The notes under the pieces are model-generated. The model saw nothing but the letters and a program-made list of their open reading frames with translations, had not been told where the DNA came from and did not search any database. From Stylophora pistillata (Eukaryota): DNA of 60,725 nt. The stretch spans positions 1,842,776-1,903,500 of the forward strand of contig NW_019217790.1 of assembly GCF_002571385.2 (NCBI RefSeq). The letters run 5' to 3'. Both the position numbers and the translations under genes were made by a program. Each line of letters starts with the position of its first letter. The first letter of the stretch is position 1. Of the stretch, positions 36,418 to 39,943 are shown piece by piece.

Positions 36418-39400
36418 GGGTGTGGACAAAACGTGGCCTAGGCCATGGCCTACCCTGTGGCCTACCCTATGGCCTACCCTGTGGCCTACCCTGTGGCCTA
36501 CCCTGTGGCCTACCCTATGCGGATNNNNNNNNNNNNNNNNNNNNNNNNNNNNNNNNNNNNNNNNNNNNNNNNNNNNNNNNNNNNNNNNNNNNNNNNNNNN
36601 NNNNNNNNNNNNNNNNNNNNNNNNNNNNNNNNNNNNNNNNNNNNNNNNNNNNNNNNNNNNNNNNNNNNNNNNNNNNNNNNNNNNNNNNNNNNNNNNNNNN
36701 NNNAGGTTTTTAATATATTTGACCTCATTCTAGTAACAATCCTGTTATAAACGCTGAAACCATGACTATTCCAGTTACATTTAATGCGCAGACGATTACT
36801 AACCTAGACTCGTCTATATCTTTATTTTCAGATTTATGGCATTACTTCACGAATATTGTCCAAAATCCTGGACATATTTAGTGCTTGCCCTTTTATCGTC
36901 TGGTTCCCCGTCAGCCATTTTCTGTTTTTGGTATCATAGTAGCGATCCAGAACGTTCAAAGACCATGGTATGTTAACGTTGTGCAGCTCGGAAACAAAGA
37001 AACGGGCAAAGTTGATGGCTTCCGATTCCGTTATCGAACCATTTGCGTTATCTTGCGGCATCCACGCTCCGAGATATGTCAGCAAACCGTTTTCCCCCTT
37101 TTGATAATCAGTTGCGTGTTTAATTGCAGTTTTGACATTGTTTTGGCCTTCAGAACTGCCGTCACTGCTCCAGTACTTCTGGGAACCAAGCACTTTGTTT
37201 GGACCAGAGGCATAAAGATGCCACTCAGCCATCATATACTTATCATTTTCATAGATTTTTGAATCAATTTTAGATAAGTCCTCGGCAGTTTTTCCGGGAG
37301 ATCCCAAAATCAGAATACGCTGAGGGTTGTTCCCACCTGTACGTCGGATTTCGTGCGTCACGTTCATGGTCCATCGGTTATATTTCTCGGTATTCTGGCG
37401 AAGACTCTCGTCATTTTTGTTATTTCGTTTGCAAGTGTCTTTTCCTAGTTCTGTAAAAAGATTAAAACTCAGTCTATAGTCCTTGTCCTTTAACTGCCGT
37501 GCTACCGCTGTCCACCAATTCACGTAGGCTTTAAAGTCCTTTTCCATGGCGCAGGCCTCTGCTTGATGGTGAACCCAGGAGATGATTGGAATCACATCAT
37601 GTTTCAGACAATGGTCGACAACGGTCGTCAGGTCGCTAAGAAACCGTTTGAATTTGACGGTAGAGTAGTCATATGAATAGAGATCTGCCCTGCATCGAAG
37701 TCTTAAGTTGCTAAAGCCTTTTTCATGGACGTCTCTGATGTTCCGTTCCCAGTACTTTTTCATCGGCGTCTTCGTTTTGAACCAATTCGTAGAAAATCCT
37801 GCTCTGACAATCCCTGCTTGGTACTGTTCCGGGGTAATTGGATCATTTACGTTCACTACTGCAAAAAAAAAAATTGAATCGACCAAGAATATTTGAACGA
37901 ACATTGTCGAATGTCTGGTTTACAACAGAGTTCGTTCACCAAGCGAAAATAAACAACGATCCAAAATTTTGACATTTCAATTCTATATCATAAGAAGACC
38001 AATGATATTAGTCGAAATGACAATTGGAAAAACAGTTTCATCGAATCTCAAAAAGTACCCCAAAACAGACGAAAATATTCAATTTGGTCTAGAGATGTGG
38101 TCTCAAGCATCGGAGCGCTGAATCCGCAGGTCTAAGGTTTGATTCTTTGTGAGGATTTGATTTTTTTTTTGTCACACGCTCATGACACACACACAAAAAA
38201 ACAAAACATCTAGACAACGAGGAGTCCCTCCTTTTCGGCGAAGTCCTTAACGCGAGTAAAAACATTAGTGAAAAAAAAAATTGATGTTAGTTTGCCGCGG
38301 GAAGCTCTTAGAGTAAGCTCCTGCGGTGCATCGACTTTACTCCAAGGGATGCCTTCTAATTAAATCATGGCTACCAGTTTCTAGCAAAGAAAAGGTGGAG
38401 CTTCATCCCTTTACCAGTAGTTTTAAGCAATTTGTTAAAGGTCTTTCATTTCTAACGAATAACTGACAAAATTTGAAATTTATATCGCGACCTTAAACTG
38501 CAACTGTGCGCAATTTCATTGATCGTTTTCGTGAGCCAATGATTTTCTTTCAGATATTTACGTGATGGAATACAAAGTAAACTCTTCACATCACATTTTA
38601 ATTAAAAATTGTCTTTGGACCCACCTGTTTCCCCGGTTATGAAAACCATAAACGGCAGGAAAGCTGAACTTAACAGGACCAATGATCTGAACATTTCGTC
38701 TCCTTAAGTTGATTGTTTTCGATCTGTATAAAGGAATTTAAAAACTACATTTAGGGCTTTGTGTCCGAGAAAAAAACGTCGTTTACTGAGTTCCGGGATT
38801 CCTGAGTGAAGTAACAATTATTATAACATACGGCGCAGATTAATATTTCCTTAAAGTATACTTCAATAGAAGATTTTAATTTTAAAATCGTACAATTTCA
38901 GAAATTCCATCACAAACTTACGAAATTTTCTGGCCGTAAATTCTAGTGANNNNNNNNNNNNNNNNNNNNNNNNNNNNNNNNNNNNNNNNNNNNNNNNNNN
39001 NNNNNNNNNNNNNNNNNNNNNNNNNNNNNNNNNNNNNNNNNNNNNNNNNNNNNNNNNNNNNNNNNNNNNNNNNNNNNNNNNNNNNNNNNNNNNNNNNNNN
39101 NNNNNNNNNNNNNNNNNNNNNNNNNNNNNNNNNNNNNNNNNNNNNNNNNNNNNNNNNNNNNNNNNNNNNNNNNNNNNNNNNNNNNNNNNNNNNNNNNNNN
39201 NNNNNNNNNNNNNNNNNNNNNNNNNNNNNNNNNNNNNNNNNNNNNNNNNNNNNNNNNNNNNNNNNNNNNNNNNNNNNNNNNNNNNNNNNNNNNNNNNNNN
39301 NNNNNNNNNNNNNNNNNNNNNNNNNNNNNNNNNNNNNNNNNNNNNNNNNNNNNNNNNNNNNNNNNNNNNNNNNNNNNNNNNNNNNNNNNNNNNNNNNNNN

Positions 39401-39943
39401 NNNNNNNNNNNNNNNNNNNNNNNNNNNNNNNNNNNNNNNNNNNNNNNNNNNNNNNNNNNNNNNNNNNNNNNNNNNNNNNNNNNNNNNNNNNNNNNNNNNN
39501 NNNNNNNNNNNNNNNNNNNNNNNNNNNNNNNNNNNNNNNNNNNNNNNNNNNNNNNNNNNNNNNNNNNNNNNNNNNNNNNNNNNNNNNNNNNNNNNNNNNN
39601 NNNNNNNNNNNNNNNNNNNNNNNNNNNNNNNNNNNNNNNNNNNNNNNNNNNNNNNNNNNNNNNNNNNNNNNNNNNNNNNNNNNNNNNNNNNNNNNNNNNN
39701 NNNNNNNNNNNNNNNNNNNNNNNNNNNNNNNNNNNNNNNNNNNNNNNNNNNNNNNNNNNNNNNNNNNNNNNNNNNNNNNNNNNNNNNNNNNNNNNNNNNN
39801 NNNNNNNNNNNNNNNNNNNNNNNNNNNNNNNNNNNNNNNNNNNNNNNNNNNNNNNNNNNNNNNNNNNNNNNNNNNNNNNNNNNNTAGGCCATAGGGTAGG
39901 CCACAGGGTAGGCCATGGCCTAGGCCAGGTTTTGTCCACACCC
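36418..39943. mobile_element. Foldback/Mutator-like non-autonomous element with 12-bp tandem-repeat TIRs and a 9-bp TSD, carrying a GH5 gene
   Basis: Left gggtgtggacaaaacgtggcctaggccat(ggcctaccctgt)n; right (acagggtaggcc)n atggcctaggccaggttttgtccacaccc. Flanks tgcagaccg (36409-36417) and tgcagacag (39944-39952). Both arms run into N gaps. Confidence 0.8.
36834..38694 (-). CDS. Secreted glycoside hydrolase family 5 (cellulase)-fold protein, 364 aa, 2 exons; predicted nucleophile Glu is Ala
   Basis: Exon 1 38694-38625 (MFRSLVLLSSAFLPFMVFITGET, signal peptide, donor gtgggt); exon 2 37858-36834 (acceptor tttttgcag); phase 1 matches. GH5-like motifs: GFSNLRL, VVDHCLKHDVIPII, WWTAVARQLKD, FNLFTE, IRRTGGNNPQRILIL, EWHLY, YLGAW, NIPWSL. 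Confidence 0.85.

What the first reader, a model, noticed from the sequence alone, without database searches (positions are those of the whole stretch)
36834..38694. Prokaryote-like GH5 domesticated with a signal-peptide exon and lacking canonical catalytic residues
Seen: the whole barrel is in one uninterrupted exon, and a separate 70-nt exon supplies the signal peptide through a phase-1 intron. The end of beta-4 reads FNLFTE (canonical NEP) and beta-7 reads YLGAW (canonical xxGE[FW]). Known: clan GH-A enzymes need a Glu acid/base after beta-4 and a Glu nucleophile on beta-7, and cellulase-type GH5 genes in animals are often horizontally acquired. Inference: this is an HGT-derived secreted pseudo-enzyme or glycan-binding protein, or it uses a non-canonical mechanism. 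It could plausibly act on algal or symbiont cell-wall or mucus glycans. My unverified recollection is that some prokaryotic GH5-annotated proteins share EWHxYAxGP and GAW, which would make this an uncharacterised subfamily rather than a recent loss.
Basis: partly seen in the sequence, partly recalled or inferred. Interest (0 to 1): 0.78.

Follow-up and report, generated by a model that had tools for sequence, protein, structure and literature searches.

The report
Coral GH5-like enzyme lacking usual nucleophile
This is a real, expressed, secreted coral gene from an old and widespread branch of the cellulase-type (GH5) family in which every member, from gut bacteria to corals and mussels, carries alanine where the catalytic nucleophile should be, so it is an uncharacterised enzyme subfamily rather than a recently broken coral gene.

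Summary
On the minus strand, a 70-nt signal-peptide exon (38694-38625), a 766-nt GT..AG phase-1 intron and one barrel exon (37858-36834) encode 364 aa. This equals the existing Stylophora pistillata model XP_022792620.1, which is annotated as uncharacterised. PolyA RNA contigs carry the 37858/38625 joint.

The fold is GH5 (AF2 pLDDT 95; Foldseek TM about 0.74). Alignments to solved GH5s place Ala264 at the nucleophile position. They also show that the acid/base Glu136 is kept; only the preceding Asn has become Thr.

FNLFTE, EWHxY and GAW are near-invariant in about 130 eukaryotic clusters and, as [DN]-x-x-[IV]-E, EWHFYAxGP and VGAWMP, in 79 bacterial and archaeal loci. So this is an ancient subfamily, nearest GH5_25. 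dN/dS is 0.29.

An extra invariant Glu211 on beta-6, which is Ser/Thr in canonical GH5, is my candidate replacement catalytic carboxylate. That is inference only.

The eukaryotic members (Anthozoa, Mytilus, an acoel and unnamed lineages) form one clade nested in bacterial diversity. Opitutales and Kistimonas sit at its base. The Nematostella and Mytilus genes are intronless. The transfer is therefore ancient, and the signal peptide was not added by exon capture.

Sulfatase and fucosidase neighbours in marine bacteria hint at sulfated glycan substrates. Activity is untested.

The parts
38625..38694 (-). Exon 1 coding part (70 nt). It gives Met plus a 23-residue signal-peptide-like segment, MFRSLVLLSSAFLPFMVFITGET, and the first base of a Val codon.
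   Evidence: Read directly. It is identical to the N-terminus of P0241/XP_022792620.1. Mean Kyte-Doolittle hydropathy of residues 4-20 is 2.1. RNA contigs cover 38625-38790 and run on beyond 38790.
37859..38624 (-). Phase-1 intron, 766 nt, GT..AG, 36% GC.
   Evidence: The joint 37858/38625 'skips 766, CT..AC on + strand' appears in polyA RNA contigs of runs X8 and X12. Intron-retaining contigs are also present at lower depth. The intron and exon 1 are conserved in a Pocillopora orthologue, L093.
36834..37858 (-). Exon 2 coding part. It holds 340 aa of the (beta/alpha)8 barrel plus the stop codon (36834-36836).
   Evidence: ORF list. AF2 model with pLDDT 95 and pTM 0.93. Foldseek top hits are all GH5, with TM about 0.70-0.77. 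phmmer to PDB gives 4im4 at 7e-9.
37449..37454 (-). Thr135-Glu136 (Thr159-Glu160 of the 364-aa protein). It replaces the canonical Asn-Glu of beta-4, and the acid/base Glu is kept.
   Evidence: It aligns with NE of CelE and FnCel5A and of CtCel5E and TmCel5A. It is invariant in 62/62 eukaryotic sequences. Bacteria have [IV]-E at this position.
37224..37226 (-). Glu211 (Glu235 full-length), two residues before the beta-6 His213-x-Tyr215. It is the family-specific invariant carboxylate.
   Evidence: It is invariant in A1 (62 sequences) and A2 (24 sequences), and 119/120 bacterial clusters have EWH. The aligned residue in solved GH5s is Ser or Thr. A catalytic role is inference only.
37065..37067 (-). 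Ala264 (Ala288 full-length), codon GCG, at the position of the canonical beta-7 nucleophile Glu.
   Evidence: 'vGAwmp' aligns with 'fGEFav' of wild-type CtCel5E and with 'fGAFav' of its E314A mutant, which is the top PDB hit. Ala is found in 60/62 eukaryotes and in all 78 bacterial and archaeal loci where this column aligned.

Best explanation
The locus is the annotated Stylophora pistillata gene LOC111331712. It is a transcribed, spliced, two-exon gene for a secreted 364-aa protein with a GH5 (beta/alpha)8 barrel.

It belongs to an ancient GH5 subfamily whose nearest solved relatives are the GH5_25 enzymes TmCel5A, FnCel5A and CtCel5E. In this subfamily the beta-7 nucleophile Glu is Ala as a family trait. 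The beta-4 acid/base Glu, the beta-2 Arg, the beta-6 His-x-Tyr and the beta-8 Trp are kept. A new invariant Glu sits on beta-6, two residues before the His.

The gene is under purifying selection. I think it is most likely still a glycoside-cleaving enzyme with a non-canonical second catalytic group. Glu211 would act as the relocated nucleophile or base, or would hold a water or the Tyr. This step is inferred, not shown.

Gene neighbours in marine bacteria suggest sulfated and/or fucosylated marine glycans as substrates. In a coral these could be algal or microbial surface glycans or mucus.

The eukaryotic copies descend from an old bacterial donor related to marine Opitutales- or Endozoicomonadaceae-type genes. 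The intron behind the signal peptide, seen in the Stylophora and Pocillopora genes, arose later.
For: - Gene model and expression. Twenty runs from nine studies hold the stretch, including polyA RNA-seq.
- Fold and nearest relatives. The A2 profile hits CtCel5E at 4e-29 and TmCel5A at 3e-27.
- Pfam PF00150 is met by bacterial, Nematostella and other relatives at 45-85 bits.
- Motif invariance across eukaryotes is shown. Across 79 bacterial and archaeal loci of many phyla it is shown, and in 120 further clusters.
- Selection: dN/dS is 0.285 against the Pocillopora orthologue (dS 0.39), 0.30 against the C11 paralogue and 0.15 against the 98% copy. Several other Stylophora copies carry stops.
- Origin: the 'TE-type' clade of 97 eukaryotic rows plus Kistimonas and Opitutales has 100* support, and the eukaryotes sit on one side of a branch with support 63.
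- The gene is intronless in Nematostella and Mytilus and in unnamed eukaryotic contigs.
- Named taxa are only anthozoans, four Mytilus species and the acoel Convolutriloba.
- Substrate lead: a co-oriented sulfatase lies directly upstream in Opitutales, Marinifilaceae, Gaetbulibacter and Melioribacteraceae, 9 of 79 loci in all. A GH29 fucosidase lies upstream in a Calditrichota MAG, and an enolase-superfamily gene in the Opitutales locus.
Against: - No activity has been measured for any member that I could find.
- The window protein itself scores nothing against Pfam or NCBIfam at E <= 1.
- I could not read model coordinates. The proximity of Glu211 to Glu136 and to the position of residue 264 rests on strand register (DSSP strands 208-212 and 260-265) and on general TIM-barrel geometry.
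- Every characterised clan GH-A enzyme I know of uses the beta-7 Glu, so a nucleophile-free barrel could equally be a binding protein.
- Sulfatase adjacency occurs in only 9 of 79 loci, and sulfatases are very common in those marine phyla.
- Support for the branching order at the base of the eukaryotic clade is weak (63-80). The direction of transfer between animals and Kistimonas is therefore open.
- The CAZy subfamily was not determined.
Confidence: 0.55

Rival explanations
1. It is a non-catalytic, secreted glycan-binding protein (a lectin-like pseudo-enzyme). The whole subfamily lost the nucleophile once and has since served to bind glycans rather than cleave them. Known parallels are inactive GH18 chitinase-like lectins and the Rsi24C GH5 sensor module.
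For: Ala occupies the nucleophile position throughout the family. The Asn that binds the substrate 2-OH is also lost. Aspeborg et al. 2012 (PMC3526467) describe GH5 modules and subfamily GH5_30 with incomplete machinery and presumed new functions. Firmicute members carry cell-wall or choline-binding repeats.
Against: The acid/base Glu, the beta-2 Arg, His-x-Tyr and an additional Glu are invariant over roughly 28-100% identity in bacteria, archaea and animals. That is more than binding usually demands. The bacterial genes sit in operon-like rows with sulfatases, a fucosidase and canonical GH5s, where enzymes are expected. Most bacterial members are stand-alone secreted or lipoprotein catalytic-domain-sized proteins.
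Confidence: 0.25
2. It is an active enzyme that needs no enzyme nucleophile. Catalysis would be substrate-assisted (a 2-acetamido or other neighbouring group of the -1 sugar) or proceed through a 1,2-anhydro route as in GH99. Glu136 would be the only catalytic carboxylate, and Glu211 would be merely structural.
For: The loss of the nucleophile and of the 2-OH-binding Asn go together. This fits a -1 sugar whose C2 substituent is not a plain hydroxyl. Cell-wall-binding repeats in Firmicute members would suit N-acetylated cell-wall glycans.
Against: Families with substrate-assisted catalysis normally keep an Asp or Asn next to the acid/base to orient the acetamido group. Here that residue is Thr, Ile or Val. 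Five eukaryotic lineages have put a Glu back at position 264, which would clash with a bulky C2 group in that space.
Confidence: 0.12
3. It is a recent inactivating loss in a coral gene, or a bacterial contaminant in the assembly.
For: The barrel lies in a single exon. The window protein is too divergent for Pfam.
Against: The gene has a spliced intron and polyA transcripts. It lies on a contig of more than 1.9 Mb, and the identical NCBI protein lies on a 1.93-Mb scaffold. Host-like GC is seen. Paralogues and pseudogenes lie on six other contigs. The Ala is shared with all relatives. dN/dS is 0.29.
Confidence: 0.02

Closest known systems
GH5 subfamily 25 endoglucanases/mannanases (Thermotoga maritima Cel5A 3AMC/3AZR, Fervidobacterium nodosum Cel5A 3NCO, Clostridium thermocellum CtCel5E/CelH 4U3A)
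   Same: These are the best sequence and fold matches. They share the (beta/alpha)8 barrel, the beta-2 Arg, the beta-4 acid/base Glu, the beta-6 His-x-Tyr and the aromatic residue after the beta-7 catalytic position.
   Different: Identity is only 15-19%. Asn-Glu has become Thr-Glu (Ile/Val-Glu in bacteria). The nucleophile Glu is Ala, so the family profile scores the engineered E314A mutant 4U5I best. There is an extra invariant Glu two residues before the beta-6 His, where these enzymes have Ser or Thr. The family-specific motifs are YAxGP and AWMPxDN.
GH5 modules with incomplete catalytic machinery (fungal GH5_30; Xanthomonas expansin-linked GH5; C. thermocellum Rsi24C-GH5 sensor), as listed by Aspeborg et al. 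2012 (PMC3526467)
   Same: They have the GH5 fold with a missing catalytic residue, and the authors raised the possibility of 'alternate mechanisms'.
   Different: Those are small, lineage-restricted groups. Rsi24C lacks the acid/base, not the nucleophile. The present family is very large and spans bacteria, archaea and animals. It keeps the acid/base and shows strict conservation of a substitute carboxylate. I could not check whether the 2012 tree contained this family, because the supplement is held as images only.
Horizontally acquired animal GH5 genes (nematode GH5_2 cellulases, coffee-berry-borer GH5_8 mannanase, mollusc GH5_10 mannanases, cnidarian GH5_27 endoglycoceramidases)
   Same: They are secreted GH5 genes with a patchy animal distribution nested among bacterial sequences. 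They are often intronless or intron-poor (PMC3526467, PMC6011409).
   Different: Those carry the canonical Glu/Glu pair and have known activities. This clade does not. Its named hosts are anthozoans, Mytilus and an acoel.
GH5_13 beta-D-galactofuranosidases (M. tuberculosis GlfH1, Bacteroides ovatus)
   Same: It was formerly a large uncharacterised bacterial GH5 subfamily and is now known to act on unusual (furanosidic) substrates.
   Different: No link was found. GH5_13 lies in the mannanase-side clade of the GH5 tree and is described as Actinobacteria, Bacteroidetes and Gammaproteobacteria only. This family matches GH5_25/GH5_4/GH5_37 structures and no mannanase. I could not obtain a GH5_13 sequence to compare.

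Membership tests
Glycoside hydrolase family 5 (clan GH-A) | (beta/alpha)8 barrel most similar to solved GH5 structures | tested here: met
   The AF2 model has pLDDT 95. All listed top-50 Foldseek PDB hits are GH5, with E 4e-15 to 2e-12 and TM 0.67-0.77.
Glycoside hydrolase family 5 (clan GH-A) | Significant sequence match to the family model (Pfam PF00150) or to GH5 sequences | tested here: inconclusive
   The window protein has no Pfam hit at E <= 1. phmmer finds GH5 PDB chains down to 7e-9. Nematostella, other eukaryotic and all six tested bacterial relatives pass the PF00150 cut-off. Membership is therefore by transitivity.
Glycoside hydrolase family 5 (clan GH-A) | Acid/base Glu at the end of beta-4 (N-E-P) | tested here: met
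   Glu136 aligns with the NEP Glu in 4im4, 3nco, 4u3a and 3azr and is invariant. The preceding Asn is Thr, so the motif is only half kept.
Glycoside hydrolase family 5 (clan GH-A) | Nucleophile Glu at the end of beta-7 (G-E-[FWY]) | tested here: not met
   Ala264 aligns with the nucleophile. Ala is found in 60/62 eukaryotic sequences, in all 78 bacterial and archaeal loci where this column aligned, and in 117/120 clusters. Five eukaryotic cluster representatives have Glu there.
Glycoside hydrolase family 5 (clan GH-A) | Other conserved active-site residues: beta-2 Arg, beta-3 His, beta-6 His-x-Tyr, beta-8 Trp | tested here: met
   Arg52, His97, His213, Tyr215 and Trp298 are invariant or nearly so in eukaryotes. 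The beta-3 His is not kept in most bacterial members (AYQADE).
Glycoside hydrolase family 5 (clan GH-A) | Retaining hydrolysis of a beta-glycosidic bond | not testable with these tools
   This needs an enzyme assay and the stereochemical outcome by NMR.
CAZy GH5 numbered subfamily (e.g. GH5_25, GH5_13) | Placement by the CAZy/dbCAN subfamily models | not tested
   No dbCAN model is on hand. The nearest solved relatives are GH5_25. The GH5_13 link was sought and not found.
Horizontally transferred gene of bacterial origin | Eukaryotic sequences nested within bacterial diversity, patchy host range, intron-poor | tested here: met
   See the tree. The named hosts are Anthozoa, Mytilus and Convolutriloba only. 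The gene is intronless in Nematostella and Mytilus. Polarity at the Kistimonas/Opitutales node is unresolved.

The most novel reading that the evidence does not exclude
This GH5 subfamily is catalytically active without the clan GH-A beta-7 nucleophile. The catalytic carboxylate has moved to the neighbouring strand (Glu211 on beta-6), or the mechanism has changed, for example to inverting or Tyr-assisted. The family would then be the first documented case of catalytic-residue migration in clan GH-A. It is spread from gut and marine bacteria into corals, mussels and acoels, with natural Ala-to-Glu revertants as ready-made controls.
Probability: 0.35. Interest if true: 0.8.

Novelty: new variant of a known kind. 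Interest (0 to 1): 0.55.

Why it matters
Clan GH-A enzymes are textbook examples of a fixed pair of catalytic glutamates on strands 4 and 7. This is a large, strictly conserved subfamily that has Ala on strand 7 and a new invariant Glu on strand 6. It is present in hundreds of bacterial lineages and in reef corals, so it is a clean, testable case. It is either a new catalytic arrangement or a family-wide switch to glycan binding.

For coral biology it identifies a secreted, expressed, multi-copy gene family of bacterial ancestry that probably handles sulfated or fucosylated glycans such as mucus or algal and microbial surfaces.

For annotation it shows that the names 'Endoglucanase D' and 'cellulase/esterase CelE-like' on these proteins are unsupported.

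Tried and rejected
- Pfam and NCBIfam scans of the window protein found nothing.
- The ESM Atlas look-alike search gave only generic 'GH5' clusters.
- I tried to equate the family with GH5_13 (galactofuranosidases). The papers were read, the GlfH1 paper is not held, and no GH5_13 sequence was obtainable. The PF00150 control genomes gave no Mycobacterium hit. The PDB neighbours argue against this equation, so I dropped it.
- The tree supplement of Aspeborg et al. is held only as image captions, so no accession look-up was possible.
- Literature searches for a nucleophile-less GH5 subfamily, or for cnidarian GH5 with this feature, found nothing specific.
- Model coordinates are not exposed, so the Glu136-Glu211 distance could not be measured.
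- The dN/dS printed for the C59 pseudogene (1.03) is unreliable. The aligner dropped the stop symbols and shifted the codon register, so I do not use it.
- Contamination and recent-loss readings are rejected (see rivals).
- The large representative search (search of protein representatives) was not run. The word search and the genome scan had already placed the protein in a family.
- No search or fold was run on a joined two-exon model of my own. Exon 2 was used by reference, exon 1 was only translated, and the joined step was left out. The database protein P0241, which equals the joined model, was only read.
- The N runs flanking the gene were left as they are.
Full report
**1. What is in the sequence**

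On the minus strand, one ORF (36834-37904) holds the whole domain. Upstream, the stretch ATG...ACAG|gtgggt at 38694-38625 encodes MFRSLVLLSSAFLPFMVFITGET plus one base. The acceptor ttttgcag|TA lies at 37859/37858, so the intron is 766 nt, phase 1 and GT..AG.

The first 23 residues have a basic start and a hydrophobic core (mean hydropathy 2.1 over residues 4-20). This is what a signal peptide looks like. No dedicated predictor was available.

I searched exon 2 by reference (window:36837-37856:-) and did not search a joined model of my own.

The public protein XP_022792620.1 / A0A2B4SZJ2 of Stylophora pistillata is 364 aa. It is named 'uncharacterized protein LOC111331712' and, automatically, 'Endoglucanase D'. 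It is exactly exon 1 + Val + exon 2. The gene model is therefore already in the databases. Contig C7 of this 398-Mb assembly is coral.

**2. Expression and splicing**

Twenty runs from nine studies hold the stretch, nine of them recorded as RNA. I laid four polyA RNA-seq runs from four studies on the stretch.
- Their contigs cover exon 2 and exon 1.
- Two of them (X8, X12) contain a contig with the joint 37858/38625 skipping 766 nt. In X12 its depth is 96, against 11.8 for an intron-retaining contig.
- The shorter side of that joint is 27 letters, which is under the tool's 31-letter bridging rule.
- I therefore also rely on Logan contigs of 1.3-1.8 kb that encode the complete 364-aa protein. 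The genomic span is 1861 nt, so those contigs cannot be unspliced DNA.

**3. Fold and catalytic positions**

An AlphaFold2 model built on 62 homologues has pLDDT 95 and pTM 0.93, with eight beta/alpha units. Foldseek against the PDB returns only GH5 enzymes at the top: FnCel5A, CelE, GH5_4 endoglucanases, TmCel5A and CtCel5E. TM is about 0.70-0.77 at 14-19% identity.

Sequence alignments to solved GH5s fix the catalytic columns.
- FNLFTE aligns with F-E-x-x-N-E-P. The acid/base Glu136 is retained, and only the Asn has become Thr.
- MAEWHLYASGP aligns with the beta-6 His-x-Tyr.
- YLGAW aligns with hFGEF, which puts Ala264 on the nucleophile.
- The best PDB hit of the bacterial family profile is the engineered E314A nucleophile mutant of CtCel5E (4U5I, 3.9e-29). 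The wild type follows at 6.1e-28.

**4. This is a family trait, not a recent loss**

The word-based protein search found 205 relatives. In an alignment of 62 of them, at 47-80% identity, many residues are invariant. These are Arg52, Arg54, Trp94, Asn132, Phe134, Thr135, Glu136, Glu211, His213, Ala216, Gly218, Pro219, Trp265 and Asn301. Ala264 is present in 60 of 62.

A scan of one genome per GTDB species with the three motifs gave 167 confirmed loci, of which 79 distinct loci were read. They cover Lachnospiraceae, Oscillospiraceae, Prevotella/Segatella, Alistipes and Flavobacteriaceae. They also cover Marinifilaceae, Saprospiraceae, Ignavibacteriota, Calditrichota, Nitrospirota, Chloroflexota, Spirochaetota, Pseudomonadota, Verrucomicrobiota and two Thermoproteota MAGs.
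- Every one has [DN]-x-x-[IV]-E and EWH-x-Y-A-x-G-P.
- Every locus aligned at beta-7 has Gly-Ala at the nucleophile position; in 75 of these 78 the following residue is Trp, giving V/L/I/F-GAW-M-[PAS].
- The six bacterial members tested all pass the Pfam PF00150 threshold at 45-85 bits.
- A profile search returned 763 more clusters. Of the 120 shown, 119 have EWH, 115 have GAW (two more have Ala at the nucleophile position with Val after it) and 120 have IE.

**5. Selection and the coral gene family**
- Against the Pocillopora orthologue (80% aa identity, from a Tara coral metagenome scaffold), dN/dS is 0.285 at dS 0.39.
- Against the intact Stylophora paralogue on C11 it is 0.30.
- Against a 98% partial copy on C404 it is 0.15.
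- The genome also holds decayed copies with stops or frameshifts on C59 (three), C4, C1265 and C1. One C59 copy is 93% identical over 2.2 kb, including the intron.
- All Stylophora copies that still show the motif read GAW.

This is a birth-and-death family, with the window copy maintained.

**6. Origin**

In a maximum-likelihood tree of 127 rows, the eukaryotic sequences group with three Kistimonas genomes (Endozoicomonadaceae, which are symbionts of marine invertebrates) and one Opitutales MAG. This 'Thr-Glu type' clade has 100* support on a long branch, apart from all other bacteria. The 97 eukaryotic rows lie on one side of a branch, with weak support of 63. The two bacterial lineages sit in the unresolved base.

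Inside the clade, a 48-row anthozoan group contains Stylophora, Pocillopora, Oculina, Actinia, Actinostola, Nematostella and the octocoral Dendronephthya. It faces a 46-row group that contains Mytilus. A three-row group of unnamed eukaryotic sequences (P0092, P0097, P0108) sits separately in the unresolved base.

A second search added Mytilus coruscus and two genes of the acoel Convolutriloba macropyga. No other named animals appeared. Many members come from unnamed eukaryote-like contigs of up to 4 Mb.

The Nematostella and Mytilus trossulus genes are single exons that include the signal peptide. The bacterial proteins also start with signal or lipoprotein leaders. The Pocillopora orthologue keeps the exon 1/intron arrangement, and the C11 paralogue has the same acceptor. 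Exon GC (44%, GC3 49%) is host-like.

My reading is one ancient transfer, or a few, from marine bacteria. It predates the hexacoral-octocoral split, was followed by patchy retention or further transfers, and a later intron arose in the Stylophora/Pocillopora genes. The signal peptide was not bolted on by exon capture. The direction of transfer at the Kistimonas node cannot be decided here.

**7. How it may work**

Shown:
- The pocket keeps Arg (beta-2), Glu (beta-4), His-x-Tyr (beta-6) and Trp (beta-7+1 and beta-8).
- It lacks the beta-7 Glu and the Asn that normally binds the substrate 2-OH.
- It has a family-specific invariant Glu211 two residues before the beta-6 His, where GH5_25 and GH5_4 enzymes have Ser or Thr.

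Inferred:
- DSSP places strand 6 at 208-212 and strand 7 at 260-265.
- Glu211 and Ala264 are each the penultimate residue of neighbouring parallel strands, so they should point the same way into the barrel top.
- Gly263-Ala264 would leave room for the Glu211 side chain to reach the place of the canonical carboxylate.

This suggests a relocated nucleophile or base. I could not read coordinates, so this is a hypothesis.

An unexpected observation bears on it. Five eukaryotic cluster representatives carry Glu at position 264 again. These are P0019, P0049 (with P0120), P0101 and P0290 with A-E-W, and P0299 with G-E-W. They need five separate changes on the tree, and all keep Glu211. The window codon is GCG, one step from GAG. 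The pocket therefore still tolerates a carboxylate there.

**8. Substrate lead**
- In four separate marine or sediment lineages a formylglycine-type sulfatase (PF00884 + SGSH_C) lies directly upstream on the same strand. These are the Opitutales MAG, five Marinifilaceae, two Gaetbulibacter and a Melioribacteraceae MAG, 9 of 79 loci in all.
- Canonical GH5 genes also lie nearby in Marinifilum, Gaetbulibacter and Yeosuana.
- The Calditrichota locus has a GH29 alpha-L-fucosidase upstream.
- The Opitutales locus also has an enolase-superfamily (sugar-acid dehydratase-like) gene.
- These lineages are the bacterial ones closest to the eukaryotic clade and share its F-N-L-F motif.
- Gut Firmicute members instead carry choline or cell-wall-binding repeats or PF07833. 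The Kistimonas neighbours are uninformative.

I take sulfated and/or fucosylated glycans as the best guess for the marine branch, at low confidence.

**9. Comparison with what is known**

The nearest characterised enzymes are GH5_25. Aspeborg et al. 2012 noted GH5 groups with incomplete machinery (GH5_30 and a few others) and listed metazoan GH5 only from nematodes, molluscs and arthropods. A 2018 survey treats animal GH5 as HGT-derived in general terms. I found no paper on this subfamily, its missing nucleophile or its presence in cnidarians. I could not assign a CAZy subfamily number. A link to GH5_13 galactofuranosidases was sought and is unlikely.

**10. Verdict**

The interesting part is not coral-specific. 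It is a large, ancient GH5 subfamily with Ala at the nucleophile position, a kept acid/base and a new invariant Glu, shared by bacteria, archaea and a patchy set of marine animals. I rate it a new variant of a known kind, with moderate interest. The biochemical tests are clear and cheap.

Noticed in passing
window 36418-36476 and 39885-39943: A 59-nt inverted repeat (98% complementary, rich in GGCCTA/CCCTGTGG units) brackets the gene. Each arm abuts an N-masked run. The same repeat directly abuts the truncated 97-98% copy of the gene on C404 (L004:1371-1490). The gene may therefore sit inside, or have been copied with, a foldback-type repeat, as another first-stage note suggests.
   Followed up: partly
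G000:C59:471448-535449 (L002, L003, L006), C4:841825-844268 (L007), C1265:5883-44225 (L008), C1:196853-197865: There is a cluster of decayed paralogues with in-frame stops or frame changes. One (L002) is 93% identical to the window locus over 2.2 kb, including the intron. This indicates recent duplication followed by decay.
   Followed up: partly
G000:C163:438647-439591: A second, canonical-looking GH5 (PF00150 87.5 bits) lies in a 503-aa open frame without stops elsewhere in the coral genome. It is unrelated to this subfamily's motifs as far as seen.
   Followed up: no
P0019 (L088:6001-7065), P0049, P0120, P0101, P0290, P0299: These eukaryotic family members carry Glu again at the canonical nucleophile position (A-E-W or G-E-W) while keeping the family's extra Glu. 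The tree requires five independent changes.
   Followed up: partly
L009-L011 (Kistimonas scapharcae, K. asteriae, Kistimonas MAG): These invertebrate-symbiont Endozoicomonadaceae carry the animal-type version of the gene (F-N-L-M-T-E, HH, no Tyr insertion), 38-40% identical to the coral protein. In the MAG it lies next to an ankyrin-repeat protein. The direction of transfer between hosts and symbionts is open.
   Followed up: partly
window 38677-38790 and beyond: An RNA contig of run X12 (638 nt, depth 63.5) overlaps exon 1 and runs more than 500 nt upstream of 38790 into the masked repeat. The 5' UTR or transcription start may therefore lie inside the flanking repeat.
   Followed up: no
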